From assembly GCF_902459465.1 (NCBI RefSeq), contig NW_022985694.1:310001-373852 (forward strand): DNA of 63,852 nucleotides, written 5' to 3'. The notes beneath the pieces were generated by a model, which had not been told where the DNA came from, did not search any database, and saw only the letters and a program-made list of their open reading frames with translations. Positions 6,852 through 55,488 of this stretch are shown one piece after another (within the stretch, counting starts at the first letter, position 1; every line of letters starts with the position of its first letter). The translations under genes and the position numbers were made by a program. The DNA comes from Asterias rubens. Its lineage: Eukaryota.

Positions 6852-6892
6852 CTGGAAGAGAACAAGATTTGTCAGGGGTTGTAAATAAGCGA

Positions 6893-20446: not shown

Positions 20447-20557
20447 CGACCGCGGTTTTTCCGGCTCATACAAAAATATTTTCTGTTCGTTCAATTTAGC
20501 TCGACCGCGGTTTTTCCGGCTCATACAAAAATATTTTCTGTTCGTTCAATTTAGCTC
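20447..20557 (+). repeat. ~55-bp direct tandem duplication (x2)
   Basis: CGACCGCGGTTTTTCCGGCTCATACAAAAATATTTTCTGTTCGTTCAATTTAGCT occurs twice. Confidence 0.9.
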
Positions 20558-25169: not shown

Positions 25170-25256
25170 ACTGAAGTGAGCACCAAATTAGGGCCCAACA
25201 CCAAATTTGGTGATGGCAAAAAAATTTGGTGCTAGCACCAAATTTTGATATAACTG
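25170..25256. repeat. CACCAAATT subterminal repeat cluster, probable end of the Sola-like element
   Basis: About five CACCAAATT/AATTTGGTG copies in both orientations. Confidence 0.5.
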
Positions 25257-25304
25257 TCAACGACCGTCATTATCCGTCGAAGACAGTGCGGAAGGATTGT
25301 ACAC

Positions 25305-26153: not shown

Positions 26154-26159
26154 TACACT

Positions 26160-26490
26160 CTGAAAATTAATTAGTCAATTTGACTAAAAAAAAATAGTCC
26201 AGCGTCATGTCTGACACGACTAATTTTAAGTAGTCAAAAGTCTGAGCATGACTAAGGATTTAGTCAGAAATGTGACTAGTTTACATTAGTCCAGTGACTT
26301 GACTAAAAAGATGTCTCATACGACTAATGTTTAGTCCATCAACATTTTGGCTTAGTCCAGCGACTTTTTAGATTAGTCCAGCGACTTTTAATCTTGGTCC
26401 AGTACTTCACTTTAGGTCGTTCGTTGATTTGACTAATGGCATTAGTCAAAGCAACAATTTAAATCTTGACTAGTTGGCATCAGTCAGGAA
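26160..26490. repeat. Subterminal TTAGTC/GACTAA motif array (end A)
   Basis: Dense copies in both orientations. Equivalent arrays at ~31135-31370, ~39280-39600 and ~58210-58450. Confidence 0.85.
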
Positions 26491-27874: not shown

Positions 27875-28240
27875 AAGACATAATGCTTTGATCAAGAGGA
27901 ACATGCTAATTAAGTGAAATGCAGTTTAACTTGGTTTATTTTAGTAAGACACAATACTTTGAGAGGAACATACTAAGTCAAATGCAGTAAAACTTGTTCA
28001 TAGTAAGACATAATGCGTTTATCAAGAGGAAAAATACTGATGAGTCAAATGCAGCTTAACTTGGTTTACTTTAGTATAAACACACAATGATCTGATCGAG
28101 GGGAACATACTGAGTCAAATGCAGTATATGTACATGTAACTTGTTTATCTAGTAAGACACAATGCTTTGATCAAGAGGAACTACTGAGTCAAATGCAGTT
28201 ACTTGGTTTATGTTAGTAACACATTGCTTTAACCAAGAAA
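27875..28240 (+). repeat. Degenerate ~60-bp tandem repeat (~6 copies); mirrored at ~37515-37880
   Basis: AGTAAGACACAATGCTTTGATCAAGAGGAACATACTGAGTCAAATGCAG-like units. Confidence 0.8.
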
Positions 28241-28251
28241 AATGGTCACAG

Positions 28252-31200
28252 TCAAATGTACCTATTCAGTTTGTCCAGGCAAGATATAACACTGCGGTCG
28301 AGAGGAATATTGTCTTGGATGTTCAGGACAATTTTCTGGAAAAAAGACAAAGTTTTCCTGAGGCATGTGGGATAAGCCAAATTGAAAACATAAAAGCTGG
28401 CTAAATACACTTTCACCGATGTCAGGAGACAAGTGGAGCTGCTGACAGCCAACCCATCAATGATCACGTCAAATGAAGTGCAGTCCTCAAGTCTGTTGTC
28501 ATTACCCTCAATGACAGGCCAAGCTGTCCCCTGTATATGAAAAAATAAATACTTTTAATTAGGGAATAACAGTGTGTTAATTAGGGAATAACAGTGTGAG
28601 GACCTGGTCTTCACTGTGTGGTAATGACCGGGTTGGTGGCTGGCTGTTGTTAATGGACCAAGCCAAAAGCGATTTTCATTAACAGCGGCCATGGTCATTA
28701 CTACCCAGTGAAGACCAGGTCCTCACACTGTTGTTCCCATGAATTAATACCTTTACTGTGAATTTTCACTTGTTCCACAGAACTTGTCTTTACATCACAT
28801 TTTAATACACCCCAACGTGACCACTCTTCGACCAATCACAGTGCATATACTCTCTCTGAGGAGTTTATTAATTCAAAACAACACAAATTGGCCATTGGTA
28901 TGTTGCAGATGCAATTTCAAAAACCCTCATCAGTTTATGAGTATATAAAATGAGACTGCCTCATGCATAGTGTAGGATAAATGGTGGTCCAAGGTCCAAA
29001 TAATGTATTCTTCACTTTTGTTTGTTCAGCCAAAAGTGAATTGTAACCGAAGGTGAATTTGAGAGTTTGTATATCAGTCATTCAAAAATTATCAATGTCT
29101 TTCTTTTCTTGAGTTCAAGTCTTTGTCTTGCGTTTGAGTTGAGTCCAAGTTAAGTCCATGAAGTTGAGTGTTAATTCAACCCAACATGTGACAAATTAAT
29201 ACAAGTTATAATTCAAGTCATGAGTAAGTCAATTAAGAGTTTTGGATTTGATCATTCATTCATAAATATCCCAGACAGTTTCGCTATTCCCAATGGAGAG
29301 CATGTCACATGGGGGTGTTTTTATGTCTGAGCTGGACTTGTTTAAGACCGGTTGGCTAACGCGTGTTAAGCACTCATAGCCACACGCCTACCTTAATGAC
29401 GCAATGCTGACATAAACCATGCCCATTCAAACTTGGCCCTTTATTGCATGGACATGACCCTGCCAGTCTTAAAGGGTCATTTAAGACCTCACTACCACTC
29501 TTTTATTCCCTTATTTAAAAAGCAGAGATGCATCACAAAAACAAGAAACAGAGATGCACTCAATTGTTTAAGTCTACTGGTTAATTATACTGTGTGGAAT
29601 ATGCGCATGCTTATTCAACCAATAGACCATGTTCTTTTGAGTGTTATTGTTTCTTGTTACGGCTGCAGTGTGAGCAACCCTTTACTTACCCCATCTTCAT
29701 CACCCAGAATCAACATATTGCAGATTTTTTCTTTTAGTGTACATGGGATGCCAAGGATGGCAGCAATACTGATAGCTTCTGTAAAAAATGCAGAAAAACA
29801 TACTTATTTTAAAGAATGTTATTCTAGAATGTTAAAGGACTTCCTCGTCTCTGGCTTGGTCCTTCATCACCTTGTCACATGACTGTTATAAAACCCTGCA
29901 ATATAAGAAACAGTTTTCCTATGCTAATTACAGGAGGTCCAGTTGACAACTGGCTCTGTATATAAATGAAACGAATACACAGCGCATGGATTGGGGGTGG
30001 GTGCTAAACTGCATTTTCCTTCAGTTTCATTTGTAGCTGAATGGCATCCCCATGGGTCACTTGAAATTGTTTTCACACCATGACAAAAAGTGCCAGTCAT
30101 TAACATGCTCTGTACAAATGAATATGCAGTTCTACGCTCCATTACACAACACGCAGCTTCATAAAGGTATGAGGCTTTAGGACTGAGGGTCACATGTGGT
30201 TGTAGGTTACACACCTGTACGACTCTTTTCATTCCGTTGGTGACTAATAATGTCCAAGGCCTGCTTGAAACATGCTGCTGGATTTTTGACACCACTGACA
30301 AGCCTGTTGACTGCATTGCCATACTTCATCATACCTGCATCAAAGAGCTGATTGATGGTCTCTTCTCCAGATCGCAGACGATTGAATTCTACCAGTATCT
30401 GTCGGTGTCAATAAAGTTATGAATTACTTGACCTGTATATCTGCATGTGTTAGGATGGCAATGGCCTTTTTTTTGTGCATGCCCTCAAGTATTTGCAAAG
30501 TGTTTGTGATTCTTCTTGTTTGCGCCTGTGTATTTGATATCAAAAGTTGTAATAAATAAATTTGAATTTACCAAAACATGTACTACAGGTTTTTTATTGG
30601 GGGTAGTGTGACCTTTCACCCTACCACCTGCTCAAATCCTAACGGGTGAACTAACTAACTCTTCCTTTGGACTATTTTTGGTACACCTCACACAAACCAC
30701 TTTTGCCATATGTGTTAGCTCTAACTAGGTGTCATTCATACTAAGTCTCGACCAATTAAACAAATGAGATTTTTTCAATGAAAAGTAAAAGTCAATGAAG
30801 TAGAAGTCGGTTAGTTTCCTTCTTCTCTTAAAGTTAAGAGTCACCTGTACACTTGACATGTATGTTGCCAAGTTTAAAAACAAACTTGATCATCTTGATA
30901 GAGGTGAATAAGGGCTTCTTAAAAATAAAAATAAAATAAAAAAGACGAGATGCCTGCCAAACAAGCATTTAAGTTTACAATGGCCACCAAAACAAATATA
31001 ATCATGAATAATGATCGTCGTGCACACAGAGAGGGCAAAGCAGGCTGGTGAAACAAAGTTTGGCTACGTTGATGTGTTTATGAGATTCATGTCCATTAAT
31101 GTAATAACAGAAATAATGTACACTGTAAAAAATAGTTAGTAAATCTTGCTTATAAATTGGTCAAAATGACTAAGTTTGCCTAGTCCTGTGTCTCTGACTA

Positions 31201-34200
31201 ATGTAATGTTAGCCTGACTAATCTTATATTTGCTGTGACTAATCACTATAAGTCAGAACTTTAACCCGTGACTAGAATTTTGTTTGGACTAAAACGATTT
31301 AGTCAAAATGTCGGGTTTTGACTAATTTTGACTGGTATGAAGCTACGGTGCTTTGACTAAGTAAGATTGGTCATGTTCCCGCCTTCCCAACATTTTAGAT
31401 GTGGGAAAAATATAAATTGCCCGCGAATTAGCAGGATGCTGGTACCCGGCGGCAACGTCAATGTATAGTTAGTGTGTAACTTGGGTTTTTAGCTTGTACC
31501 CGTTAACTTGCAAACTGCAGCTAGCATGCAGGGCGTACATGATACTCTCCCGTTCGGCGTGTGTGATACATACACTTCACAGGGCAAGGAGGCTCAATCC
31601 AGGCTCCGACCAGTTTCAGAAATAAGGTGAGAATATTGGTTTTCCCGTTACATTTTTAAAACCGTAACATACTTAGCCAGAGGGAGACCGTTACATTGAC
31701 GTTAGTCTACAATCATATTGTGGAAAAGCTTTTAGTGTTTTTGGCCACAGAACTCTAGGTGCATAGGCCAGCACTTAACGGCGGCTAGGCCTTGCATTAC
31801 GTGTCAAAATGGAGCATGCAGGCGAAGTTTATCAGGTAGATTCAAGTTTAAAATCTCTGATTTTCACCCTATAATTAATATTGCCAGACTGAGAATTTAA
31901 TGTAGAACACTTTATTGTAAAGTTTGTATATTTTCAAGATATAGCGACTGTAAAAGGACGAAACAAAAAAGCTTGTTTAGCATGTTGTTGTTTTTCCAGT
32001 GGGGCTACGGGCGTGTGTATAGTGTACGTGTGTGTACACAAACGATGGTCCTAATCATTGTAGTTTGTATGCAATGCATGCCCTTGCTTTAGGCTTTACT
32101 GCACGACACATGATGTGCAAGGCCTAGTCGGTTAATGTTTAAATCAACCCATGCTATATTATAATATTATGGGGATGGTCAAAGCTTATTATTTATTGGC
32201 CATCATAAAGTGCGGTCCTAAATGTCTTCCAATCAGCAAGGACTTTACATTTAAAAATAAGTTCATATTCATAACTAACTTGAATTTGAAAACATGGGCA
32301 TTAAAGTTTCCATGTAACAAACGTAGGCCTAACGACAAGTAACAAGTAATAACGGTAGCATGTTCGGAAAATCAAGTGTACCAAGCGATGGAATGTAGTT
32401 ATCGCAACTCTATAGTCCATCAGCCCCAAATTTTGGACTATCAAGTTAAGACTTATAATGTAGCAACTAACGAGGACAAGGTATAATTCTTTAAATGTTT
32501 ACTGAAGCACAAAGTATTGATACTTTTATGTTGCACCTCATAATTTTTTTAATGATTTAGTTGTAAAAAATCATTTTATACATTCCATTGTACACATGAT
32601 TTATTTCCTTTAAAAAATAAGGCTTCAGGAATGCCAACAAAAATAGGTCACTTGCTGACAATGGCTGGATTCTCAATGTGACATCATCTTACATGTTTCC
32701 TGAGCTATTCCAGAAAACAATTGTTCTGAAATGGGGTCTGTCAAATGAATGACAAATATGTGTTTTTTCTTTTAACAAACTCACTCAATTCTGTTCAATG
32801 AATGTGAGGTCATGTTGAGAATCTAGCCATGTCAAAAAGTGACCTATTTAGGAGTTCATGAAGACAATTATTTTTAAAGGAAATAAATCATTTAAAATTA
32901 CACAGGGATGCACAAGACTTTTTTCCAACTTAATCATTTAAAAACAATATAAGGTGCAATATCAAAGCATCATACTTTGTATTTCAGTAAACCTTTAAAT
33001 ATATGTAATAATTGCATCATGGGAAATGAGTAAAACAAATGTCTTGCCCTACACCGATGTGATAAGCACTGTATACTCAGGAGCTTTCAAGTCCTGGGGA
33101 AAAAGTTCCACAGGCAACTCAGGTGGGTTTCGAACCCACGACTTAACCACTAGACCACTGAGCAAGGCGGATCCAGTATTATTTGCAGTGGGTACCGGGC
33201 TTGGTGGTCTAGACATCTGCTGTAGTCACGCAGGAGTCATAGGTTCGAATCCTGACAAGGGCCCAATTTCATAAAGCTGTTTACCGGTAAGCACATTTTT
33301 GTGCTTACTGTTGCAGAAAAATGTGCTCAAGCATACATATGTAAACGTATTTCATTCACCATGATTTCTCAAGTTAGCAGAAAATTTCGCAGCGCGCATG
33401 CACGTTCACCATGGATTTGCATTGTTACGTCACTCATGTGCTAACAGCGGGTTAGCCAGCATTTACCCTTGCTTACGATAAACAGCTTTATGAAATAGAA
33501 ATTCTGCTGAGGGAACTGCTGCTTACATCTTTTATGAAATTGGGACCATGTTGCCTGTGGAATTTTTTATCCGCAAGACTCGAAAGCACTGAATATATAT
33601 TCAGTGCTTATCACATCGGTGTAGGGCAAAACAAAATTTTAAGGCATCATCTATACTCACACCACACTGAATATTTGTTCCTTTTTAGCACAATTATAAG
33701 CCACAGACTTCACAGAACTTGGAGAGAAAATATTTTGACAACCATCTCCACTGAGTGGGGATTGTTTTATGCAAAAAATAATAACCATCAGAACTGTGAG
33801 CTCTTTTGTTTTGTTTACAGCTTAGCTTGCTTAATTGTATGTTCTGATTGGTTGCCATTCAAGTTCTAAATATAAAACAGCACCTGTAACTCAAATGCGG
33901 GACAATACATCTTTCAAACATTGTCTTTTTAAAATCCATCCTGTAGATTTAAATAGATAAGATGTTTCATTTAAGATTTTCTGTTATTTTGAATACTTTT
34001 ATTTAATAGTAAAGTTGTAGGTTTTGCTATATTTCCGTTGTAGTCTGAGCAGCTTTGTCCTGTGAGAAACCCATTTCATCATCAGCAGCATGTCTTGGAA
34101 GGCAAGGTTAGTTTCTAATTTTTGTTATTCTCTAAACCGCCAAGATTTGAATTTGGCTTATGGGTCATTCCATGTCAGTTCAACAGGCTTTTGGACCTGA

Positions 34201-40200: not shown

Positions 40201-41100
40201 ATTTTCTCCAAAAGAAGATGTGTTATCTTGTTGTACTGCTCAGACGTAGGATAGCTGGTTGAGAGAAAAAATTACAAGATGAAAGTAAAAGTCCAGGCCA
40301 CTAGCCCATTTTCCACCATACATGGGATGAAAAGCAACAGAATTTGTTTAACCAGTTTATTTGTGTGATATCTATATTAGTCATGTATCAATATTATATG
40401 TTAATACCTATCGAACCGACACAGTATTTAGTCCAGAGCATTTTGCTATTTCTATGAACACTGGTCTTCTCATGATTGAGATGAGGAGGGAGCATTTGAT
40501 CTCCCTTCACCCTCAATGTTAAGAATACTATAGAATAGCTTTTTTTTGCACACAATGAGATGATGCTCTTGAGGTATAATCTAAATGCACTTTGGTAAAA
40601 CATTTTTTTGTTTTTTTCGGGGGGTGGGGTGGTCACCTGACACCACAATGTACCAAATCCCAGTATAGCCAAACTACACTTTGTAGGTGTATGTGCTGCA
40701 TTATTGTAGGTGTTGAATCATTTAAATTTCCTGACTGATTCCTCTGCAAAGTTGAGAAAGTACTCAAATGATTTAACAAAACATTAAGCATGATCAACCT
40801 TATACTTTGAACTCAAGTTCTGATGGCCGGCCGAGTCACCAGAGTGTGGGTTCGAGTCCTGGTTATGACACTTGTGTCCTTGAGCAAGACACTTAACTTT
40901 AATTGCTTCAACCAGGAGTAAATGGGTACAGAGATCGTTGATGTGAATGATAAGTACGTGTGCGCCGAAATGGCTGTCGTAGTGGGGCTGCATACTAAAG
41001 GAGTTGAGATGGTTTCAGGAATGCTTAAGGCCCCATGAAGAGGGGGTAGTAATGTTGTAGGCACTTTGATACAATGCTTAAAAGTGCCTACATAAATGCC

Positions 41101-41140
<40 letters not shown>

Positions 41141-47100: not shown

Positions 47101-50100
47101 CAGACTATACCAATTAATGGCCATTGCCCATGCATCTGCATCTTTTTGTTCTAAATCAACCTCTATATCCTTCAGCTTATGAAGGACATTGCAACCCAAC
47201 AATACTGGAAAACTTGTATGATTCCCTGCCTCACCCTTAGGAAATTCTTTGACCACCAAAAAATGTGCATCAATAGTCTGGTTATGTACCATCAGTGGGG
47301 CATGTATGTACCCCTCAATTGGTACCTCACTATTCCCTGCCCCAAACACACGCAGGTAAGTACCTAGAGTTTTGACTCCACTCAATTTCCCTGCAAGGTG
47401 ATCCCTATAAAAAGAGGCGCTAATCAGAGAAGTCTCTGCCCCGGTATCGAGGATACATTCCACTGGCACTCCAGCCAAAGCAATATGAGCCTTGGGGCTC
47501 TCTTTTACTAGACTGGTTAGTATGTCTTCATAAGACTTCTCTGTTACACTTCCAACTGGTGAGGCCTTTCCAGATTGTTCCTCTGTCACTCGGCCTACAG
47601 TGGCAGAGAAGTCTGGTTTCCCGACCCTGTGTTTTGTGCATCTCCCATAGCCTGCCCTTGCCCCCCATTCGCTTTTTCGTGAGCCATACGAAGTTTACAC
47701 TCATGCTTCATGTGACCTGGGCGTTTACAATAAAAACAGCGAATCGGGGGCCTGTCCTGCCGCCTTCCTGAGCCTTCATACATGCCCTGGCTAGTTACCG
47801 TCCCACTTTGTTTCACCACTGCTTGCATAAGCGTAGTTATCTGTTCCTGCTGTTTGCAAAGAGTTTCTTGCTGTGCTTGCATACATTTAAGAATCTCTTG
47901 TTGCTGTTGCAACACTGTTTGCAACTGTGTGTCCCCTTGGGACTTGTTAACTACTTGGTTAATGCTAACATTAGCATCAGCCACTGGCTCGTCACTATTC
48001 AGATCATTTTCTGTACCTAGGTGATGCAAGTGCACACTTGCACCACGTCGAGAACCCCGAGGGTACTCCTCTAGATCTCTGAACAACTCGCGAGCTGAAT
48101 CCCTCATTTCGGTAAAATCCTGATCCGGTTCAGCCAACTCTAAGCGCCTCAGCTCAAGCCTGACACCTTGATTCCTTGCGCCCGCCACAAACTGCCCAAT
48201 CAAAACCCTATCTCTCAAACCCTTCAATGCATCTTTCTCTGTTTCTGTAGCAACCTCTAAAATCCGATCATGCATTCGCATGAGCGAGCGGGAAAAATCC
48301 ATAAGGGATTCGTCTTCCCTTTGCCGTCTTTCAAAAAGGGCCTTCTGAAGGGCCTGTACTGACTCCTCTGCCCCAAACTGACGCCGAAGGAGTTTTTTTA
48401 GCGCTGCATAGTCACCCGTTACATTCTCATTGTGGCATTTGATCTCATCGCGAGCAACACCCGCGAGGTGGTGGACAACCACTTTAGCCCTATCTACCTC
48501 AGGGATACGACATTGTTGCAGATAAACCTCTGCATCTTCAAGCCATTCAATAATGGTCGGATCTCCCGGTTTACTAGGCCTACCATAGTATTTACCCAAC
48601 TTCAAGGGCCTCTGAATGACATTCTTCGGTTTATCTTGCCGAAGTGCCTCGGTCAGCCCTGCGACCAAGCGCGTCACAAGATCAGCCTCTGGTACGGCCA
48701 TTGTGAGTCAAGAAATTATGATTCAGTTATTGAAGGCTAACCAATTTGTACAATCAAAATTAAGTCATAAACACCTAAACCCAGGTAAATTTGCTTCAAC
48801 AGGACCGGTTGGTTTTCACTAGGAATAAAACTAACACCTATACATTATCAGGTAAAATTTACTGACTAACAAACTATATATAGGCCTATCTAAATCCTAC
48901 CAACAATGTGCGAATTGAATCGCATAATCCCACCTCACTGCTGATCAACCAGTTCAGTCCAGTTCAGTTCAGAGTCATTAGATTTCACATGTACATGCAC
49001 ATGTAAAGGTTGAGTTCGTAGCTCCAAAAGGGTCCAACAGCACTACCGCCACCGGGCTTCTCCACTTGCACTGCCACAGGCTATTCCAGTCGCTGTCCTC
49101 CACTTGGATCCTCACTCCCTCTTCAGAACTCGGCCAATGCCCTCAATGTACTGGACGACAACCAGCAAAGCAGCAGATTAAAGCAACCCCATCCGTGTTA
49201 CCAAATTTGTAGTGTTTTGTTATCAGTCCGGAGACAATTAAGGAAGGCCTGACACCTTGTTTTTGGGTTGCTCACTGATACGTTACTCTGCTGACAGATT
49301 TATTCACCATCCGAAGAAAACCTATTACAAACATAGATCCATAAATCTAATTAATTATCATGCATGTAACGACTAATATTTAAGATTACTTTTCCACAAG
49401 TAGCCTTCCACCTCAGTTACACTAAACAAGTCTACATAACACTTAATTATAGGCCGGATACATATCCATACAACGTGAACTTCAGATCATGTGCTGTATA
49501 TTGATCAACCATTGTTACCCAGTTTCACCCAAATTAACCCTCTAAATTTCTACTCACCAACCGATCCGTTCCTCTATTTATTGGCAATCAAACTGGCTCC
49601 ATGAGCGGGTCTCTCCAACTTCTTCCTCCACCCCGAATGTTGGATTTTACCCTCTCATCATTGTCATACGTGACACTCATTTAGAGACCAACAACGAAAA
49701 AGGACGCAACAAATAGACCCCTCCGCCTAAACCGGCTAAAATTACTACGCTACACACTGATTAATTACCAAACTCACCTATAATGAGCTGATTATTGAAA
49801 ATAGCATAGTGAATATTTGTAATAATGTGTACAATTACATTACATACAAGAATAAAGACGAGATTGAGACCCAAATTCTTTCTCAGATAAAATAATCCAA
49901 AAAGTTATGCCTTTTTACATCCTTGACATTTGTATCCGTGCGACTACCGTTTAAGTACAATGGCGCCCTCTATCGTTTACCAAAGTCATTCAACAAACTT
50001 TTTATCACCGTAATTAACGAAATGCCCATGGGTATCATAAAATATTGATTCATCACATGTTTATTAAACTGCTTTATGGGGGGGAATGAGCATATAAGAA

Positions 50101-53100
50101 TACCATGAACTTCAAAAGCATTTTTTTAAAGATCTCATCCCGTGTTCAGTCTAGCAATGACCTTTACAATAAAAATCAAGTGTCATGGGTCTTGAAAAGT
50201 TGTTTCCTTGTCTTTGGCTTAATTCAGACTGAAAGGTCTGAAAGATGTTAGCAAACAGACTGTAGTTGCTCAAGTTGGTGAATTCAAACTTTTTAAGAAC
50301 CGTTAGTTCCCAGGTAAATGCATCATTGGCTCTTGTTAAAAAAAATCATTTTTTTTACACGGTAATCTTGTATAACTTGTCTTTGGGTTCAATAAGTGAA
50401 AAAAGTAGTTTTAACAAATTGTTCTTACCCGATGGTGTCCTTGATCTGGACTTTTGAGTTGTTTTCCACCTCCTCATGGTCATCAGCATCAACCCAATCT
50501 TCAAAATCACGGTCCCAAAGCTGTGTTTGGCAGGCACTTAGTCCAAATAGTTCACATGCCTTTTTCTTAATGTCTTCAACTTTCACTATCTCCCCACTGT
50601 TCAGGTCAAAGTTAACCCTTCTATTTTTTTCTCCATAAATAAACAAGTATCTATTTAAAAAGAAAAATAAAAGAAATCATTCGGAATCTCCATTTGTTTT
50701 ATTCAGATTTTTTTGTATTTGCCTCCTTTTTTTTAAATGTACCAAAACTGAGTTTAAAGCAGCTGGGCACTGACAAAGAACTATCATTTTGCTGTCTGCT
50801 GGAAACCTATGTGTGTTCTTTAACAAAGCAATACATGCACAACTGAAATTTATTTTTAATGATTACACTATGGGGACACTACATGTATGTGATGACGTAG
50901 TACAACAACCTCACCCATGTTACTATGATAGACCCCTAAAGGATAATGATCTACAAGTTGAGATACTTCCAGGACAGAGAACTCATCAGTCAATGTTAGT
51001 ACATAGCCAGAGATGTGACGTATATATTCACTGTCCCTAGTGTTTTGGGTTACAAGATACACTTTGCCATCAATCAAGCAACACATCTCTATAACACCAA
51101 ACTCCACTAGTCCATCTTGACTAAATCCTACAGCAACTGCGAGACCATTGCAATACCAGGTACCAGCACACAACACTTTCTTCGCAGTGTACACTGACTC
51201 CCCATTGACTAGTGGTTGCAGAATGTTTTGTATGGATTTCAACAAAATCCTCATTGGAACAACATGACCACAGGTGTGATCAACCATATCTTGCATGAGA
51301 AATGTTTTCTTTGTTCTCATCCAGGCCTGGTAGTACTCATGCCTCATTGCAAGCGTCTTACTCATGTTTCGTCTGTTTTTTGACCGGTTGGCGAGTTCCT
51401 TGAAGTACAAGTGTTTCCCCTCATACCTCAATGTCCAGCAATTTACGAGTGGTCCAAACTTCAATAGCAACTTTGGATAGTGAACTATGTAATGGAACTT
51501 TGGCTTCATTGAATTATCTGGAAACTCGATGAAGTAACTCTGTAGGAACATTGCAATCAGGTCTGCAAGGAATTCAGTTAGCGGGACATCTACTTGATAT
51601 GAAGTACAGACTTGCACTACATCCCCAAGAAGAAGTAACACTGACCACACACTATCATCTTCTGGAACTCTATGACCTACCATAAGTGGTAAAAGGCGAA
51701 GGAAACACCATGCTTGTACAGCCTTTTGCTTCACTTTGAATTTTCCTAGTTGGGATGCCATTTTGGATGGTTTGTTTGTTTTGTCGGTACCTCTGTACGG
51801 AAAGTTTTCCACTTGGTCATTTAGAAATTCCAGTGTAAAGTATTCTTGTCCGACACAATGACGAATGACATTTTCAATAACATCTGGCACTATACCCTCA
51901 AAGAAGTCATGAGCAATATCTGGTGGTAATCCATGTACAACATGAAAATTGTCCAGTTGGTGAAGTGGACTTACTCTCTTGATTCCATACACATGTGCTA
52001 CAGCTGGCATTTGAGTCGCTAAATCTGATTGTTGGTTGTATGAATCCTTTGTTCTAAGAACGAGATCTGTGTCACGGAAATGGTCTTTCAAAGTGTGTTT
52101 TGTGATCATGCAGTATCTACACATACGATCTGTGTTGAAACTCTCTTGGAAGCCTCCGATTCCATGTGCAGCCAAGTTGTCCGCCACAACCATCGAAAGA
52201 GATCCCTTGAAGTTGTACATCATGCCATCCTTTTCAACATTTAATCCAACAGATTCCAATTGTTTCATATCTTGTATGAAAGGGGCCAGTACCTGTAGTA
52301 TTCCGTATTCTACCAATACTTCTGATGGACAAAGTATAACAAGTTGAATAGAGCAAAGCTTGGAGCGAAATTCTGGGGGAAGATTACCAAGACAAAAGTA
52401 GAAAGCCGAGAATTTCAGCTGTTTTACTTTATTTCCTATAGGATTAGCAACTGTGAAGTCATCATAATATAATTGGACTTCAATAGTTGAATGATTCTGT
52501 GAGAACAACTTGTTGTCTTTGTAGAAGGAACCATCGCAAAAATCTTTGATAAACCCCTCACTTTGATGTCCATTTACCACTTCAGCAAAGATGTCATCTT
52601 TGTTTAAAAGGGATTTCAGAGTCTCCAAAACACTGACATACTGCATAGACTTCACCTTACCATTTTGTCTTCCCAAAACATACTCAACAGGCTCAACAAA
52701 GTCAAAATTATTCTTAACAAAGGTGTTAAGTTGGTTGGTTTTCCTGAACAAATTAAAAGACTCTTCCATGTCTGATTGGCTGAAAATTTCTTGTAATTCT
52801 TCAGCTCTCACTTGAGGAAGCAAATCTTGAGCTCTCTTGTGCAGTTGCTCCCTTGCTTGTTCAATTATGTTTTCTACTTCATCTGCAACATGACTGCATA
52901 TTTGATCACATACTTTAAACTGCTCTCGCAAGCCTAATATAAAACTGGAAGCTACTCGATCAGTATCTACAGGATTTTGTGCTTCTTCATTTGGCAAAAA
53001 TCCTTCCTCTACCTCTTCATCGCTACTGGCTTCTGATAGTACACCATCTTCCTCATTCATTCCTTGCCCCTCGAAACCATTTTCTGGTGCCAGTCTTTCA

Positions 53101-55488
53101 TACCTGCCCCAAAATGCAGAGTGCATTTTCTTCACATGAAGCTGGAATGATCTAACACTGCGGAAAACCCTCTGACAACCTTGTAAACCACATGTTATAA
53201 GTGACCTTGGACCATTGTGAATGTACCTGTAGTGATTCAACAGTCTCAGTAAATTTTGTGATCTATATTCACATTGACTGCATATAAAATCTTCCATTGT
53301 CTGAGTTTTCTTGTAGCAAAAACCAATTCGCTTTTCATTTTTAATTAAATCTTTGTCAGTGTTGCTGCTTCCTTATGATTGGCAAGCAAGATAAAAATAC
53401 AGCTGAGGACAAATTGAGCCTTCAAAACATTGCATTATCCCCACCCCCTTTAAGTTTAATTTTTAACTACACTGTTTTAGTAGTCTTAGAGGAGACCGTC
53501 AAATTAGAAAGGTGACTGTGTTGATTGAGAAAGATTGAAGATGGTGTCCGATTGTTAATGTTGTTTGATGGAGACTGACCTGTAACATGAAAATGAAATG
53601 TGAAATGAAATAAAAAAAAACAAAAAACAAAAATGAGAATGGCCTATAATCTGGACGCCATCGTTTTTTAAATTCCAACAATTAACTATTCAAAGTTCAA
53701 ATAAAATGCTTTTAAAGGACTTTGAAAAAAAAATTGATAATTAAAATTGTATGTCATAATTTTTTGACATATTGTTCAGTTTGACATATTGTTCAGTTTT
53801 TTTCTAGAAATTTTGTTAACAATGAGATAAAAATTATGCCTTTTGAAAAATGCATTTTGCTAATCAAGGTCAAAGGTAATATTTTTACACATGTACATTA
53901 TTATACATGCACATAATAAGCACACGCATATGTACATACTTTTTAAGTTTTCATCCTTAACCGCCATTGTTCAAATAATCATAATTCAAACTGTGCGCGT
54001 GCCCATCCCAACCTTTCTAGAAATATTGCTAATGTACATCTTAAGCTAACATTGAGATAAAAATTATACATATAAAAAAAATGACCTTGCTAATCAAGGT
54101 CAAATGTAATTTTTTTGCGTAATTAATGTTTTTGTGGTACATAATATAATGTTGATTTAGTTTTTATGAAATCTGGGACATATTAAGAGCTTTAAACTGG
54201 TGTAAAAATTATCACTGTAGGCCCCTAGGTGTTTTATTTTTAGAGATGGTTATCAAAACATGACAATAGGTCATTCCGTGTCAATTCAACACGCTTTTGG
54301 ACTTGACCAACACAGATTGAAACGTTACTTGGTGTGCTGAATGGACTTATTGAGAAACCACCAGAACAGACATTTTATGTCATTCAGATAATTACTTTTT
54401 GAGATACAGCTTAACAAACTTTTGACTAATTAGCTTGACCCTCTATGTTTGGACAACCATATCTCCAAAAGTAAAGCACCCACATAAATAAATTTTCCAC
54501 TATTTTAAAGCTCTTGACATGGCCTTCATTTAATAAAATAAGGAGAAAAAATTCCACGTAGCACAACAAAATTACGCACAAATGTGACATTTGCCCTTGA
54601 TTTGCGAAAATGTATATTTTTCAAAATGCGTAATTTTTTCATTGTTAGCTCATGATATAAGCAACATTTTCAGAAAAATTTAGGATGGGCACTCTTACAG
54701 TTTTGGAGTTATGATAATATGAACACAGGCTATAAAGGTTAAAAACTTTAAATGAATGTACATATGCAGGTGTACATACATGTATACAGCTGTACATGTA
54801 CATCATGTACACGTACATCATGTACACGTACATCATGTACACGTACATCATGTACACGTGTATACAGTAGGCCTATAATAGTTAGTACTGTACTTTAAAA
54901 ACATGTCCCATGACATGACTCATGTGCAGTGGCATAATTAGAAGGGGTGGGGGCAGGGCGGCCTCCACCCCCTCCTCCTCCCCCCCCCCCCCAACCCTCA
55001 TTGAAATCATAAAAAATGTTTTTTTAAAATGTGTAAATCAAGTAACATATTAAATGGCTTGCACTTCTTGGGCCCCAAAAGTAAAATCTTTGCCCCCACA
55101 TGCCCCCCCCCCCACCCCCCAAAAAATTGTGCGTAATTTTGTTAAATGCTAAGTGGAATTTTTTTCTCCGTCAAGAGCTTTAAAATAGTGGAAAGTGTTA
55201 TGTGGGTGCTTTACTTTTGGAGATATGGTTGTCCAAACATAGAGGGTCAAGCTAATTAGTCAAAAGTTTGTTAACCTGTATCTCAAAAAGTAATTATCTG
55301 AATGACATAAAAATTCAGTTCTGGGGGTTTCTCAGTAAGTCAAATCAGCACACCAAATTTTGTGTCGATCCGTGAAGGTCAGGTCCAAAAGCCTGTTGAA
55401 CTGACATGGAATGACCCATAAGCCAAATTCAAATCTTGGCGGTTTAGAGAATAACAAAATTAGAAACTAACCTTGCCTTCCAAGACAT
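28252..55488 (-). CDS. SAMD3-like EnSpm accessory protein, 491 aa; exons 55488-55472, 50650-50429, 41355-41146, 40254-40155, 39995-39621, 30398-30215, 29778-29690, 28530-28252
   Basis: All seven introns are GT-AG with matching phases; 1,476 nt with no internal stop. Motifs recalled from SAMD3-like proteins: WDRDFEDWVD, YPTSEQY, WKYRLQYKFANSR, TLADRR...YPWL...EFNRL, FYVFNLAYP. Exon 1 is assigned on phase fit only. Confidence 0.8.
33043..33632. mobile_element. Foldback element with back-to-back tRNA-derived segments and a nested MITE (~33259-33548); mirrored at ~55948-56537
   Basis: Inverted ends GCCCTACACCGATGTGATAAGCACTG; A/B-box-like motifs on both strands. The nested element has GG[G/T]CCCAATTTCATAAA TIRs. 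Confidence 0.65.
34162..35310. mobile_element. Non-autonomous element with long imperfect inverted arms; mirrored at ~54270-55420
   Basis: GGTCATTCC[A/G]TGTCA[G/A]TTCAAC ends; internal arm TTTTGACTAATTAGCTTGACCCTCTATGTTTGGACAACC is inverted at ~35095-35165. Confidence 0.65.
34721..34790 (+). repeat. 15-bp tandem repeat (CGTGTACATGATGTA) x~4; mirrored at ~54795-54860
   Basis: Direct reading of the sequence. Confidence 0.9.
35978..37504 (+). pseudogene. Duplicated last two exons of the SAMD3-like gene in the deletion derivative (35978-36066, 37226-37504)
   Basis: Reverse-complement copies of 29778-29690 and 28530-28252; upstream exons 2-6 are deleted. Confidence 0.85.
40808..41135 (+). mobile_element. 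tRNA-derived SINE, 5'-truncated
   Basis: B box GGTTCGAGTCC, GTGTCCTTGAGCAAGACACTTAAC core, 3' stem-loop and (TAT)n tail. Flanked by TTATACTT direct repeats at 40800-40807 and 41136-41143. Confidence 0.8.
41447..42296 (-). repeat. 3' LTR
   Basis: Direct repeat of 49208-50057; I saw about four substitutions by eye. Confidence 0.97.
42297..42310 (-). other. Polypurine tract
   Basis: CTAGTAGGGGAGAA on the minus strand, directly abutting the 3' LTR. Confidence 0.8.
42567..43148 (-). CDS. SGNH/GDSL-family hydrolase (esterase/lipase), Gypsy ORF3, 193 aa
   Basis: Block I FGHSF (Ser), block II GEGG, block III DLGTND, block V DGVH (Asp/His). Intact ORF between pol and the PPT. Confidence 0.9.
   Translation of the reverse strand: MSFVLFGHSFVKRLKRKRGSQFKIELQSKVVPVTCIGEGGLTLSRIRARPRKYYEYLRQANPLVLIIDLGTNDLCSKNVNPNQVHSSLCDFVYELPKRGINPEVIVFLPVLPRTGGLRGGQVSLEEFNDRAERFNDLIQQSTFVEDQWWLWEHRGLKNSRYNLDGVHLNTSGRALYEKTLRQITKYFESRIWA
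43399..47589 (-). CDS. pol: Gypsy Pol polyprotein (protease, RT, RNase H, integrase)
   Basis: LDTGAETS, YLDD, RNase H EIDAS, HHCC (HDGWGH..CEQC), LAIDF / HSDQG / ERFN and a GPY/F-like DPYVV. 1396 aa uninterrupted. Confidence 0.97.
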   Translation of the reverse strand: MTEEQSGKASPVGSVTEKSYEDILTSLVKESPKAHIALAGVPVECILDTGAETSLISASFYRDHLAGKLSGVKTLGTYLRVFGAGNSEVPIEGYIHAPLMVHNQTIDAHFLVVKEFPKGEAGNHTSFPVLLGCNVLHKLKDIEVDLEQKDADAWAMAINWYSLTKNPVVEGSHGANKCVRDPLGARTGRNPVHLLPREVRSITCYVQANQSSLDGQTVLVEGLSSCADSGGQTSNIDGNCRVYDLCTVVSGRTVNVLVANVGMRVIELSPHTKLAYVTEVSSKTNVALETGVDCVHVVVNHCLSESGEYLDTGRTEGAPGVDSNELDIEMGDAVESRARELYVFEDGSEYQLPYGLSLDLCADLCKEDQDKIVQLIQKHDKVFSQNSLDLGLCDKVPHKIDTTDDKSISQPYRRIPPQHFREVRELLQKFLDQGIIQKSKSPYASPIVLVQKKDGSLRICVDYRRLNAKTVRDSFPLPRIEESLEALQGARYFSSLDLAHGYHQVVMDSESISKTAFRVPFGLFEYTRMPFGLVNAPGTFQRVMEMCLGDLNLSELLIYLDDILVYSSTVQEHIDRLDRVFTRLADFGLKIKGAKCKLFRRHVSYLGHVVGPEGVAVDNDKIKRIEDWPIPKTGAQLRSFLGLAGYYRRFVPGFSKIAAPLHALVPSLAKGNSRSKPSPFCWSSEAQVAFDTLKQTLTQAPVLAYPDFSRPFVLEIDASLQGLGACLAQCDKEGKRHPVAFASRGLRGAEARYPDFSSFKLELLSLKWAVVDKFRDYLLGVPFTVLTDNNPLSYLQTAKLGACEMRWIAQLAAFTFDVKFRSGASNRVADALSRNPSHSLTGEVEEILQCKVHSTVVPLQHIEVHKVLTSHDTKAGPPQVKCQSGIFPSWTPEQLSALQRADPVLKCIWERWDQGWKPNEVFQAEREEPVEIKSWLWQWPRFIEKDGVLHRRVMDPLHGELDQVLMPTSLQQRVLEGCHDGWGHQGVVRTCALLRRRVFWPKMAGSVRRHIGHCEQCVISKASEPQAKVPMRHLLAFRPLEVLAIDFVKIDRGAGGYEDVLVMTDIYTKFVQAYPCKDQHAVTVAKVLRNQWFSKYGIPCRLHSDQGRNFEGEVVRELCALYGMKKTRTTPYHPEGNAQTERFNRTLFGLIKSMDERDRRRWPDLLQHLVFVYNATPHCTTGVAPYLLMFGREPLIPLDQMLGRTDNDWDQDFVREQSSLLSRASELVKERVAKSCNRNKATYDRKVKPSKPIEIGSHVLLRKCAFKGRHKLADKFERDPYVVVWINEHSDVFRIRPLKGGPERVVNRKLLRLDPFAESDTENESDESDGDSDWEVLHTEPSGDQSLVQDLQGVSNVEVGEPPSLHCPASEHLRSSQRTTRGKHSNPFRLPCSAIK
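47581..47622 (-). promoter_or_regulatory. Putative -1 ribosomal frameshift signal (G GGA AAC + hairpin)
   Basis: Heptamer at 47622-47616 in the gag frame, 7-nt spacer, then stem CTCTGCCACT/AGTGACAGAG. pol is in the -1 frame and open across the heptamer. Confidence 0.75.
47595..48701 (-). CDS. gag: Gypsy Gag (capsid + CCHC zinc knuckle), 368 aa
   Basis: CFYCKRPGHMKHEC knuckle; position between the PBS and pol. Confidence 0.92.
   Translation of the reverse strand: MAVPEADLVTRLVAGLTEALRQDKPKNVIQRPLKLGKYYGRPSKPGDPTIIEWLEDAEVYLQQCRIPEVDRAKVVVHHLAGVARDEIKCHNENVTGDYAALKKLLRRQFGAEESVQALQKALFERRQREDESLMDFSRSLMRMHDRILEVATETEKDALKGLRDRVLIGQFVAGARNQGVRLELRRLELAEPDQDFTEMRDSARELFRDLEEYPRGSRRGASVHLHHLGTENDLNSDEPVADANVSINQVVNKSQGDTQLQTVLQQQQEILKCMQAQQETLCKQQEQITTLMQAVVKQSGTVTSQGMYEGSGRRQDRPPIRCFYCKRPGHMKHECKLRMAHEKANGGQGQAMGDAQNTGSGNQTSLPL
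49185..49203 (-). other. Primer binding site
   Basis: TGGTAACACGGATGGGGTT, 4 nt after the 5' LTR, complementary to a tRNA CCA end; the isoacceptor is uncertain. Confidence 0.75.
49208..50057 (-). repeat. 5' LTR
   Basis: See 3' LTR. Confidence 0.97.
50868..53297 (-). CDS. EnSpm/CACTA-type (animal) transposase, 809 aa, single exon
   Basis: Two N-terminal C2H2-like fingers, QLYYDDF..NPIG, FYFCLGNLPP..RS, ADNLAAH..GGF.ESF..CRYC, PPDIAHD..EG and KPKFHY..HYP...FGPL..WT.RYEGKH. No stops. Confidence 0.93.
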   Translation of the reverse strand: MEDFICSQCEYRSQNLLRLLNHYRYIHNGPRSLITCGLQGCQRVFRSVRSFQLHVKKMHSAFWGRYERLAPENGFEGQGMNEEDGVLSEASSDEEVEEGFLPNEEAQNPVDTDRVASSFILGLREQFKVCDQICSHVADEVENIIEQAREQLHKRAQDLLPQVRAEELQEIFSQSDMEESFNLFRKTNQLNTFVKNNFDFVEPVEYVLGRQNGKVKSMQYVSVLETLKSLLNKDDIFAEVVNGHQSEGFIKDFCDGSFYKDNKLFSQNHSTIEVQLYYDDFTVANPIGNKVKQLKFSAFYFCLGNLPPEFRSKLCSIQLVILCPSEVLVEYGILQVLAPFIQDMKQLESVGLNVEKDGMMYNFKGSLSMVVADNLAAHGIGGFQESFNTDRMCRYCMITKHTLKDHFRDTDLVLRTKDSYNQQSDLATQMPAVAHVYGIKRVSPLHQLDNFHVVHGLPPDIAHDFFEGIVPDVIENVIRHCVGQEYFTLEFLNDQVENFPYRGTDKTNKPSKMASQLGKFKVKQKAVQAWCFLRLLPLMVGHRVPEDDSVWSVLLLLGDVVQVCTSYQVDVPLTEFLADLIAMFLQSYFIEFPDNSMKPKFHYIVHYPKLLLKFGPLVNCWTLRYEGKHLYFKELANRSKNRRNMSKTLAMRHEYYQAWMRTKKTFLMQDMVDHTCGHVVPMRILLKSIQNILQPLVNGESVYTAKKVLCAGTWYCNGLAVAVGFSQDGLVEFGVIEMCCLIDGKVYLVTQNTRDSEYIRHISGYVLTLTDEFSVLEVSQLVDHYPLGVYHSNMGEVVVLRHHIHVVSP

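What the first reader, a model, noticed from the sequence alone, without database searches (positions are those of the whole stretch)
28252..55488. SAMD3-like multi-exon gene is the second gene of an animal EnSpm, with the transposase nested in its first intron
Seen: eight exons over 27 kb splice into a 491-aa open frame (MSWKAR/YLFIYGEK...), and the single-exon transposase lies wholly between exons 1 and 2 on the same strand with its own acceptor-like site near 53310. Known: maize En/Spm makes TnpA and TnpD by alternative splicing, with the transposase ORFs in tnpA intron 1, and TnpA binds subterminal repeats. Inference: this protein is the animal functional analogue of TnpA, and vertebrate SAMD3-type genes may derive from such accessory genes.
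Basis: partly seen in the sequence, partly recalled or inferred. Interest (0 to 1): 0.8.

Follow-up and report, generated by a model that had tools for sequence, protein, structure and literature searches.

The report
Two-gene CACTA transposon with SAMD3-like partner
The eight-exon "SAMD3-like" gene is real and is the regular second gene of an animal EnSpm/CACTA transposon, found next to the same transposase from corals to fish, but what it does in transposition and whether vertebrate SAMD3 descends from it are still untested.

Summary
Eight GT-AG exons on the minus strand (55488 to 28252) give a 491-aa ORF, 55% identical end to end to a Patiria miniata protein that NCBI names SAMD3-like. The intact 809-aa transposase ORF (53297-50868) lies between exons 1 and 2.

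Both genes sit inside one TIR-bounded EnSpm/CACTA element (26156-58461). It has CACTCT/CACTGT termini, a 2-bp TA target duplication, 21 subterminal TTAGTC motifs, and is inserted in a 222-bp satellite.

- a young Gypsy LTR retrotransposon in intron 2 (41447-50057);
- an inverted, 99.3%-identical deletion derivative of the same element in intron 5 (31121-39609).

The transposase/SAMD3-like pair recurs in eight other loci from seven species (sea star, two sea cucumbers, brittle star, oyster, two fishes, octocoral). In Apostichopus, RefSeq numbers both proteins as isoforms X1-X4 of what appears to be one gene. In the octocoral, the partner carries a true SAM domain.

The protein has a ubiquitin/PB1-like N-domain and a helical core with no structural match. 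A TnpA-like role and the origin of vertebrate SAMD3 remain inferences. Nesting is seen only in echinoderms.

The parts
26156..58461 (-). Autonomous CMC-EnSpm/CACTA element, 32,306 bp as it stands and about 15.2 kb without the two nested insertions. The gene strand is minus.
   Evidence: Termini are CACTCTGAAAATTAATTAGTC (26156, + strand) and ...ACTATTTTTTACAGTG (ending 58461). Removing the element plus one TA restores the 222-bp satellite unit.
26154..26155 (.). Target-site duplication TA. The second copy is at 58462-58463.
   Evidence: The flanks ...AACAAGCGTA| and |TAAGATACGGG rejoin to the satellite consensus AACAAGCGTAAGATACGGG (D4).
58150..58461 (-). 5' subterminal region with 8 copies of the motif TTAGTC(A/C)A.
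26156..26520 (-). 3' subterminal region with 13 copies of TTAGTC(A/C)A in both orientations, some as palindromic pairs (TTAGTCAATTTGACTAA).
   Evidence: 42 of the 68 sites in the window lie within about 350 bp of the four element termini.
55472..55488 (-). Exon 1 of the SAMD3-like gene (ATGTCTTGGAAGGCAAG|GTTAGT, phase 2). It is plausible but not backed by RNA.
   Evidence: The RefSeq exon 1 in Apostichopus has the same form (ATGTCGTTAGTTCG|GTAAGT, 1950 bp upstream of the transposase ATG), as does the Amphiura one (...ATGGAAAG|GTATGT).
50868..53297 (-). Transposase ORF, 809 aa. It has two N-terminal C2H2 fingers and the DDE residues D279, D373 and E626.
   Evidence: 13 of 37 aligned sequences (the window ORF plus 36 homologs) hit Pfam PF02992 Transposase_21; the window protein itself does not.
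53300..53310 (-). Acceptor-like AGs 3 and 12 nt upstream of the transposase ATG. They are weak here.
   Evidence: Stronger acceptors lie at the same place in Patiria, Amphiura and the cichlid.
50429..50650 (-). Exon 2, the N-terminal ubiquitin/PB1-like beta-grasp domain.
41146..41355 (-). Exon 3
40155..40254 (-). Exon 4
39621..39995 (-). Exon 5, the basic stretch and the most conserved part of the core (...YPWLFDEEE).
30215..30398 (-). Exon 6
29690..29778 (-). Exon 7. A second copy lies on the + strand at about 35977-36069 in the nested derivative.
28252..28530 (-). Exon 8 with the stop codon. A second copy lies on the + strand at about 37238-37495 in the nested derivative.
41447..50057 (-). 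Ty3/Gypsy LTR retrotransposon inserted in intron 2. It is not part of the EnSpm element.
   Evidence: LTRs are about 851 bp with 4 mismatches. The TSD is TGTT (41443-41446 and 50058-50061). The gag ORF is 47595-48701 and the pol ORF 43399-47589, with RVT_1, RNase H and rve domains.
31121..39609 (+). Nested, inverted internal-deletion derivative of the same element. It keeps the 5' 4.75 kb and the 3' 3.74 kb and has lost the transposase and exons 2-6. It sits in intron 5, 9 nt after the exon-5 donor.
   Evidence: It is 99.3% identical to both outer ends and has the same termini. The TA TSD is at 31119-31120 and 39610-39611, and the deletion junction is at about 35863-35872.

Best explanation
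The 491-aa gene is the accessory (second) gene of an autonomous animal CMC-EnSpm/CACTA DNA transposon.

Shown:
- It and a DDE transposase lie inside one unit bounded by CACT termini, a 2-bp TSD and subterminal TTAGTC repeats.
- The family was recently mobile. A 99.3%-identical deletion derivative with its own TSD has jumped into this copy.
- The same gene pair is kept in EnSpm elements of echinoderms, a bivalve, teleosts and an octocoral.

Inferred:
- In echinoderms both proteins come from one transcription unit. It would start at a promoter upstream of the short exon 1, inside the 5' part of the element.
- Skipping the transposase exon would give the SAMD3-like mRNA. Splicing into, or retaining, the exon that holds the transposase ORF would give the transposase mRNA. 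This is the maize tnpA/tnpD logic.

Inferred more weakly:
- The protein acts as a self-associating cofactor of transposition.
- Its N-terminal module is a PB1/ubiquitin-like beta-grasp in the window, the other echinoderms and the molluscs, and a SAM domain in the octocoral. PB1 and SAM domains are both known head-to-tail self-association modules.
- Behind that module come a basic NLS-like stretch and a mildly basic helical core.
- The protein would help gather the repeat-rich element ends, the transposase, or both into a transposition complex, as TnpA does. The transposase's own C2H2 fingers would read the DNA ends.
For: - Gene model and full-length homology.
- Element borders, TSD and restoration of the satellite.
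- Subterminal motif: 42 of 68 window sites lie in about 1.3 kb at the four termini. The same motif occurs at the ends of the Apostichopus and Patiria elements.
- EnSpm identity of the transposase.
- Recent mobility, from the nested derivative.
- Conserved pairing on the same strand in L001-L007. Two octocoral copies are 98% identical and TIR/TSD-bounded, with the pair head to head.
- A complete Patiria element (4487-18194, TSD AA) holds both genes.
- One-gene annotation in Apostichopus: XP_071820322 is the transposase (X1); XP_071820323, -324 and -326 are SAMD3-like (X2-X4).
- The transposase lies inside the CDS range of the SAMD3-like gene in L002 and L004.
- Acceptors lie just upstream of the transposase ATG in several species.
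- Identity to the window falls in roughly the same order for both proteins, from Patiria through Apostichopus, Amphiura and oyster to the fishes.
- Fold: N-terminal beta-grasp with ubiquitin-like, PB1 and DIX matches. SAM_1 is found in 5 of 30 family members and a weak PB1 hit in one.
- Charge: the core has pI 8.8 and the basic stretch pI 10.4.
- Literature: zebrafish CMC-EnSpm elements carry 'two full proteins' (PMC11202377) and make a 2-bp TSD (PMC13189230).
Against: - There are no RNA data for this species, and exon 1 codes for only 6 residues.
- The acceptor in front of the transposase is weak in this copy. Using exon 1 as a shared leader would put an out-of-frame upstream ATG before the transposase ATG.
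- Nesting is absent in oyster and fishes, and the orientation is opposite in the octocoral. A shared transcript is therefore not a general feature of the pair.
- No DNA-binding fold or any known fold was found for the core, and there is no Pfam domain.
- The transposase carries its own conserved zinc fingers, so the partner need not bind DNA.
- This copy has 8.5-kb and 8.6-kb insertions in two introns and may no longer be expressed correctly.
Confidence: 0.6

Rival explanations
1. The gene is transposon cargo, but the protein is not a TnpA-like end-binding factor. It would act as a regulator, for instance an inhibitor or dosage control of transposition, an anti-silencing factor, or an adaptor to a host pathway through its ubiquitin-like or SAM module.
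For: - The core matches no DNA-binding fold.
- The transposase has its own two conserved C2H2 fingers.
- The N-domain matches plain ubiquitin-like domains as well as it matches PB1 or DIX.
Against: - The pairing with the transposase is kept across four phyla.
- Dense subterminal repeats occur at both ends, a feature known from elements that use a second end-binding protein.
- None of this excludes a regulatory role.
Confidence: 0.25
2. Both genes are transposon genes, but they are independent units with their own promoters. Exon 1 at 55488 would be a false or minor exon, and the RefSeq isoform grouping an artefact of overlapping models.
For: - Exon 1 is only 17 nt of CDS.
- It is out of frame with the transposase ATG if spliced there.
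- In oyster and fishes the second CDS starts after the transposase stop.
- In the octocoral the genes diverge head to head.
- The Patiria RefSeq model starts the protein at an ATG just upstream of the exon-2 acceptor.
Against: - In the window no in-frame ATG precedes exon 2, because a stop lies upstream. An upstream coding exon is therefore needed.
- The RefSeq models of Apostichopus and Amphiura both use a short upstream exon that ends in phase 2 with AG or CG, as here.
- The Apostichopus proteins are numbered isoforms X1-X4 with consecutive accessions.
Confidence: 0.12
3. SAMD3-like is a host gene. Either a transposase-only element landed in its first intron, or the transposon picked up a host fragment by chance.
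For: - Many SAMD3-like genes are annotated as ordinary genes in animal genomes.
- Transposons do sometimes capture host genes.
Against: - Both genes lie between the same TIRs and TSD in the window, in Patiria and in two octocoral copies.
- The deletion derivative keeps exon 1 and exons 7-8 between the same termini.
- The pair recurs in seven other species.
- An ancient capture that then became a fixed element gene is not excluded. That would be the best explanation seen from the other direction.
Confidence: 0.03

Closest known systems
Maize En/Spm (CACTA) with tnpA and tnpD
   Same: - CACT termini, a short TSD and many short subterminal repeats in both orientations.
- Two element proteins.
- The transposase ORF lies between the first and second exon of the accessory gene on the same strand.
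- Internal-deletion derivatives (dSpm-like) move using the same ends.
- The maize background is from established knowledge and is restated in PMC1636069.
   Different: - The TSD is 2 bp here, against 3 bp in plants.
- The accessory protein has no detectable similarity to plant TnpA-type families. No Pfam hit was found.
- Exon 1 is coding here, and its ATG is out of frame with the transposase.
- Alternative splicing is not shown for this copy.
- The transposase has N-terminal C2H2 fingers.
Teleost CMC-EnSpm elements (zebrafish, Trachurus; PMC11202377, PMC13189230)
   Same: - CACTC... [quoted passage not shown]
- The goldfish and cichlid loci fetched here show a transposase followed by a 524-530-aa protein related to the window's second protein (profile E 2e-41).
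   Different: - In fish the second CDS starts after the transposase stop, so it is tandem and not nested.
- The papers do not name the second protein or link it to SAMD3.
SmTRC1, the Schistosoma mansoni CACTA element (PMC1636069)
   Same: It is an animal CACTA element for which alternatively spliced short products lacking the transposase domain were proposed as TnpA analogues.
   Different: According to that paper, the SmTRC proteins have no detectable relatives in other animal elements. Here the partner belongs to a large, conserved metazoan family.
Vertebrate SAMD3 (SAM domain plus an uncharacterised C-terminal region)
   Same: - NCBI and UniProt name the window protein's relatives SAMD3 or SAMD3-like, including members and fragments with no SAM domain.
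- A SAM_1 domain followed by this core occurs in the octocoral transposon copies.
   Different: - The window protein has a ubiquitin/PB1-like beta-grasp in place of SAM.
- Direct homology to a vertebrate SAMD3 sequence could not be tested here.

Membership tests
CMC-EnSpm/CACTA DNA transposons | Terminal inverted repeats that begin with CACT(A/C/G) | tested here: met
   The ends are CACTCTGAAAA (26156) and CACTGTAAAAAA (reverse complement of the end at 58461). The nested derivative has the same ends.
CMC-EnSpm/CACTA DNA transposons | Short target-site duplication (2-3 bp) | tested here: met
   TA for both the outer and the nested element, and the empty satellite site is restored. Related elements have AA (Patiria) and CA and TA (octocoral).
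CMC-EnSpm/CACTA DNA transposons | DDE transposase of the tnp2 family (Pfam PF02992 Transposase_21) | tested here: met
   Met by transitive homology only. The window protein gives no PF02992 hit even at E<=10. Its homolog P0023 (E 7e-163 to the window ORF) scores 29.5 bits against a cut-off of 28.6. 13 of 37 aligned sequences hit at E<=0.01. D279, D373 and E626 are retained.
CMC-EnSpm/CACTA DNA transposons | Multiple subterminal repeats in both orientations | tested here: met
   21 TTAGTC(A/C)A sites lie in the outer 310-365 bp of the two ends. 42 of 68 window sites lie at the four termini.
En/Spm-type expression (tnpA/tnpD from one unit by alternative splicing) | Both proteins come from one promoter and share a 5' exon | not testable with these tools
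   No RNA data. The indirect support is the Apostichopus isoform numbering X1-X4 with consecutive accessions and the nested CDS ranges.
Plant TnpA-type accessory proteins | Sequence homology to plant En/Spm accessory protein families in Pfam | tested here: not met
   No Pfam family at all for the exons at E<=1 or for 10 full-length relatives at E<=0.01.
Plant TnpA-type accessory proteins | Binds the subterminal repeats and is required for excision | not testable with these tools
   This needs binding and transposition assays.
SAMD3 family | N-terminal SAM domain | tested here: not met
   No SAM hit in the window exons or in the closest relatives. SAM_1 is present in 5 of 30 family members, including the octocoral copies that lie inside transposons.
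SAMD3 family | Core region homologous to the C-terminal region of vertebrate SAMD3 | not tested
The link rests only on names given by NCBI and UniProt to relatives that lack a SAM domain.
PB1 / ubiquitin-like beta-grasp domains | Beta-grasp fold; for PB1 also an acidic OPCA-type motif | tested here: inconclusive
   Foldseek gives probability 1.0 and target-normalised TM 0.6-0.7 to ubiquitin-like, NBR1 PB1 and Dvl DIX domains, but E-values of only 0.004-0.05. There is one weak Pfam PB1 hit among 30 members. The acidic WDRDFEDWVDADD stretch looks OPCA-like, by eye only.
Ty3/Gypsy LTR retrotransposons (the insertion in intron 2) | LTRs, a 4-5 bp TSD, gag, and pol in the order RT, RNase H, integrase | tested here: met

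The most novel reading that the evidence does not exclude
The SAMD3 protein family of animals, including vertebrate SAMD3, would be the conserved accessory protein of metazoan EnSpm/CACTA transposons. It would consist of a self-associating head (PB1-like or SAM) on a previously unclassified helical core. Vertebrate SAMD3 would then be a domesticated EnSpm gene. If so, it would be a trace in mammals of a superfamily that, as far as the plain text shows, the table of a 2018 Repbase review (PMC5753468) does not mark as having known traces in the human genome. It would also give a testable lead to SAMD3's unknown function.
Probability: 0.4. Interest if true: 0.75.

Novelty: new member of a known kind. 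Interest (0 to 1): 0.55.

Why it matters
It gives a name and a family to the little-described second protein of animal CACTA transposons. That protein has travelled with the transposase in cnidarians, molluscs, echinoderms and fishes. Its head domain is either PB1-like or SAM, which points to self-association as part of its job.

It also flags hundreds of genes annotated as 'SAMD3-like' in invertebrate and fish genomes as probable transposon genes. This matters for gene counts and for claims of family expansion.

If the link to vertebrate SAMD3 holds, it offers an origin and a functional hypothesis for a gene of unknown function. The window also documents a very recently active element: an autonomous copy hit by its own deletion derivative.

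Tried and rejected
- **Pfam:** nothing for each exon or for ten full-length relatives.
- **PDB:** the sequence profile search found nothing. Foldseek of the whole model found only the N-terminal beta-grasp. Foldseek of a core-only model (pLDDT 85.7) against PDB and BFVD found nothing significant. No fold-based function could be assigned.
- **Word-indexed homolog searches:** the searches with P0123 and with a 14-sequence profile returned only 3 and 7 hits and no vertebrate SAMD3. The direct SAMD3 comparison was therefore not possible.
- **Closest transposase relative:** DNA of the contig carrying P0001 (78% identical) could not be fetched.
- **Conserved exon-1 region in Patiria:** blastn aligned only the terminal 58 bp, and a strict pattern search found no short first exon there.
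- **Assembly artefact:** I considered that the large, nearly perfect inverted repeats were a fold-back artefact. I rejected this because the inner copy has exact element termini and its own TA duplication, and differs from the outer copy at 24 mismatched positions plus 13 gap openings.
- **Host gene with an intronic transposon:** rejected, because both genes lie inside the same TIR/TSD unit in three species.
- **Literature:** searches found no paper that links SAMD3 with transposons.
Full report
**1. The observation**

The gene is on the minus strand. I rebuilt it from the sequence. The exons are 55488-55472, 50650-50429, 41355-41146, 40254-40155, 39995-39621, 30398-30215, 29778-29690 and 28530-28252. 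All seven introns are GT-AG with good consensus. The phases fit, and the CDS is 1476 nt, giving 491 aa.

The product aligns from end to end with Patiria miniata XP_038074352.1, which NCBI names 'sterile alpha motif domain-containing protein 3-like'. 271 of 491 residues are identical. It is 43% and 42% identical to two Apostichopus japonicus proteins. The exon-5 piece alone finds 303 relatives at E<=1e-3 among 1.84 billion representatives.

The 809-aa ORF at 53297-50868 lies on the same strand between exons 1 and 2.

**2.

A repeat scan of the window shows large, nearly perfect inverted duplications. Read at the base level, they resolve into a nested structure.

- **Outer element (26156-58461).** Its ends are CACTCTGAAAATTAATTAGTC... 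and ...ACTATTTTTTACAGTG. It is flanked by a TA duplication and sits in a 222-bp satellite (25196-26153 and 58484-63852). Removing the element and one TA restores the satellite unit exactly.
- **Gypsy insertion in intron 2 (41447-50057).** This is an 8.6-kb Ty3/Gypsy LTR retrotransposon.
  - The LTRs are about 851 bp with 4 mismatches, and the TSD is TGTT.
  - The gag and pol ORFs are open.
- **Nested derivative in intron 5 (31121-39609).** This is an 8.5-kb inverted copy of the element's own 5' 4.75 kb joined to its 3' 3.74 kb. It lies 9 nt after the exon-5 donor.
  - It has the same termini and its own TA duplication, and is 99.3% identical to the outer ends.
  - It is a dSpm-like internal-deletion derivative that has transposed into the autonomous copy. 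It is therefore direct evidence that the family moved recently.
  - It is not an assembly fold-back, because it has exact termini and a TSD, and differs from the outer copy at 24 mismatched positions plus 13 gap openings.

Without the two insertions the element is about 15.2 kb and the gene spans about 10 kb. This is similar to the 13.7-kb Patiria element described below.

**3. The element is an EnSpm/CACTA transposon**

- **Termini and TSD.** The ends are of the CACT type and the TSD is 2 bp. A zebrafish CMC-EnSpm element has the TIR CACTCAAAAAAATGA and a CA TSD (PMC13189230).
- **Subterminal repeats.** The hexamer TTAGTC/GACTAA occurs 68 times in the window. Of these, 42 lie within about 350 bp of the four termini, where about 1.4 would be expected from length alone. 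The consensus is TTAGTC(A/C)A, found in both orientations and sometimes as palindromic pairs. The same motif marks the ends of the Apostichopus and Patiria elements.
- **Transposase.**
  - The window ORF gives no Pfam hit of its own.
  - Its homologs do: 152 were found at E<=1e-3, the best in echinoderms at 43-78% identity.
  - P0023 passes the curated threshold for PF02992 Transposase_21, and 13 of 37 aligned sequences hit it at E<=0.01.
  - The alignment keeps D279 (YYDDF), D373 (VADNLAAH) and E626 (RYEGKH), and two N-terminal C2H2 fingers.

**4. The two genes travel together**

I fetched loci around transposase or SAMD3-like relatives from seven other species. In every one, a relative of each protein lies next to the other.

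| Species (locus) | Arrangement |
|---|---|
| Patiria miniata (L007) | A complete element at 4487-18194 with CACTGT ends, TSD AA and TTAGTC-rich ends. An unannotated intact transposase ORF (63% identical to the window's) is followed by the SAMD3-like gene. |
| Apostichopus japonicus (L002) | The transposase CDS (10001-12445) lies inside the CDS range (8051-19188) of a 510-aa SAMD3-like gene. |
| Amphiura filiformis (L004) | Nested in the same way. |
| Holothuria leucospilota (L001) | The depositors' gene model fuses the two and is named SAMD3. |
| Saccostrea echinata (L003) | Transposase, then an 82-bp gap, then the 540-aa SAMD3-like gene. |
| Carassius auratus (L005) and Astatotilapia calliptera (L006) | Transposase followed by a 524-530-aa relative (profile E 2e-41). 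|
| Dendronephthya gigantea (L008, L009) | Two 8.6-kb copies, 98% identical, with CACTGTAAAT TIRs and 2-bp TSDs (CA and TA). A multi-exon transposase lies head to head with the partner gene. |

Identity to the window falls in roughly the same order for both proteins, from Patiria through Apostichopus, Amphiura and oyster to the fishes. This fits long co-descent, but I did not run a formal test.

A host gene that merely hosts a transposon in its intron is therefore excluded. A recent chance capture is also excluded.

**5. One transcription unit?**

This is the weakest structural step.

*For:*
- The window has no in-frame ATG ahead of exon 2, because a stop precedes it. An upstream coding exon is therefore required.
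- The proposed exon 1 has a good start context and donor (ATG...GCAAG|GTTAGT).
- RefSeq models in Apostichopus (ATGTCGTTAGTTCG|GTAAGT, 1950 bp upstream of the transposase ATG) and Amphiura (...ATGGAAAG|GTATGT) use the same kind of short phase-2 exon upstream of the transposase.
- At the Apostichopus locus the proteins are XP_071820322 (transposase, 'isoform X1') and XP_071820323, XP_071820324 and XP_071820326 (SAMD3-like, 'X2' to 'X4'). I read this numbering as NCBI grouping them into one gene with shared exons.
- The cichlid partner is likewise 'isoform X2' of a locus whose other product was not seen.
- Acceptors lie 10-25 nt before the transposase ATG in Patiria (T-rich tract plus CAG), Amphiura, the cichlid and others.

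*Against:*
- The acceptor in this copy is weak (CAAG, or CAG 3 nt before the ATG).
- Splicing exon 1 to it puts the exon-1 ATG out of frame with the transposase. That would act as an overlapping upstream ORF, not as a fusion.
- In oyster and fishes the second CDS starts after the transposase stop, and in the octocoral the genes diverge. The En/Spm-like nesting is thus so far an echinoderm feature. It is more likely convergent with maize than ancestral.
- There are no RNA data.

**6. What the protein is**

No Pfam family matches.

An AlphaFold model of the Patiria orthologue (30-sequence alignment, mean pLDDT 82) shows four parts:
- an N-terminal beta-grasp (residues 6-84);
- a disordered linker;
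- a long helical region that includes a basic stretch;
- a small beta unit with three helices at the C-terminus.

Foldseek matches only the beta-grasp, to ubiquitin-like, NBR1 PB1 and Dvl DIX domains. Probability is 1.0 and the target-normalised TM-score is 0.6-0.7, but E-values are 0.004-0.05. A separate model of the core alone (pLDDT 85.7) matches nothing in the PDB or BFVD, and a sequence profile finds no PDB relative.

In the window protein the N-domain is acidic (pI 4.8), the core is mildly basic (pI 8.8), and residues 186-235 (KFANSRKRDD...HKRKS) are strongly basic (pI 10.4) and look like a nuclear localisation signal.

Five of 30 family members, including the transposon-borne octocoral copies, carry a true SAM_1 domain in place of the beta-grasp. 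PB1 and SAM domains are both known head-to-tail self-association modules (established knowledge). Finding one or the other in front of the same core is my main reason to think self-association is part of the function.

That fits a TnpA-like role in gathering repeat-rich ends. It equally fits a non-DNA-binding scaffold or regulator, because the transposase has its own zinc fingers.

**7. Relation to SAMD3**

The family name is supported only through names given by others. NCBI or UniProt call relatives from Patiria, Apostichopus, Holothuria, Mytilus, Saccostrea, Haliotis, Hyalella, Stylophora and Pocillopora 'SAMD3' or 'SAMD3-like'. These include proteins and fragments with no SAM domain, so the similarity that earned the name must lie in the core.

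The window protein fails the SAM-domain criterion. It should be called a member of the SAMD3-like core family, not a SAMD3 orthologue.

The octocoral result shows that the full SAMD3 architecture (SAM plus core) exists as a gene inside an EnSpm element. The direction, domestication or ancient capture, needs a rooted tree.

**8. What is known**

- A TnpA analogue made by alternative splicing was proposed for the Schistosoma CACTA element in 2006 (PMC1636069).
- No paper in the library links SAMD3 to transposons.
- In the plain text of the table of a 2018 Repbase review, EnSpm/CACTA does not appear to be among the superfamilies marked (in bold) as having traces in the human genome (PMC5753468). 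Bold type is not visible in the stored text, so I inferred this from its spacing.

**9. Verdict**

The claim that this is the second gene of an animal EnSpm is well supported and holds widely. The claim that the transposase lies in its first intron, with En/Spm-like expression, is plausible and backed by annotation in echinoderms, but it is unproven here and not general. The claims of a functional analogue of TnpA and of an ancestor of vertebrate SAMD3 remain hypotheses.

The element itself is a new member of a known kind. The unpublished link between the SAMD3-like family and EnSpm is the part worth following.

Noticed in passing
window 31121-39609: An inverted internal-deletion derivative of the host element has inserted into intron 5 of the host's own accessory gene, 9 nt after the donor. 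It is 99.3% identical to the host ends and has a TA TSD. It retains exon 1 and exons 7-8 only. Splicing exon 1 to exon 7 would shift the frame.
   Followed up: yes
window 41447-50057 (ORF 42567-43148, minus strand): A young Gypsy LTR retrotransposon with open gag and pol carries a third ORF of 193 aa between pol and the 3' LTR. The ORF has a sub-threshold GDSL/SGNH lipase-like hit (Lipase_GDSL_2, E 1.8e-6, 29 bits against a cut-off of 32.9).
   Followed up: partly
window 25196-26153 and 58484-63852: A 222-bp satellite array flanks the element on both sides, with at least 24 units on the right running off the window. The element inserted into one unit.
   Followed up: partly
window 54266-55419 (copy at 34160-35312): A 1.15-kb foldback or MITE-like insert with 222-bp inverted arms (90% complementary) lies in intron 1, just downstream of exon 1. 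It contains a 15-bp microsatellite (ACGTGTACATGATGT)n at about 54791-54859.
   Followed up: no
window 203-781, 20447-20556, 21608-21690: Other tandem repeats lie outside the finding: a 21-bp (or 42-bp) array, an exact 55-bp duplication and a 21-bp array.
   Followed up: no
L007 6892-9324 and 9990-10020 (Patiria miniata JADOBP010000027.1): An intact transposase ORF (63% identical to the window's) is not annotated in this record. The start codon of the RefSeq SAMD3-like model probably lies in the intron just before the real exon-2 acceptor (ATGTTGATATTTCCACATAG|A).
   Followed up: partly
L004 13773-14830 (Amphiura filiformis CM076867.1): The exon-2-like segment (QFVFIYGEHCKAA...) is tandemly repeated about six times with a period of about 200 bp, downstream of the transposase. 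Only the last copy looks intact.
   Followed up: no
L008 about 5005-13594 and L009 about 4966-13550 (Dendronephthya gigantea): Two 98%-identical 8.6-kb EnSpm copies have CACTGTAAAT TIRs and 2-bp TSDs. The multi-exon transposase and a SAM-domain SAMD3-like gene are arranged head to head in them.
   Followed up: partly
L002 7590-7620 (Apostichopus japonicus CM075719.1): The 5' terminus of this copy looks degenerate (GTACCGTATAACATTAGTTAGTCA where CACTGTAAAC... is expected), while the 3' terminus (...TTGTTTACAGTG|TA at about 21087) is intact. The copy may be immobile although both genes are annotated and open.
   Followed up: no
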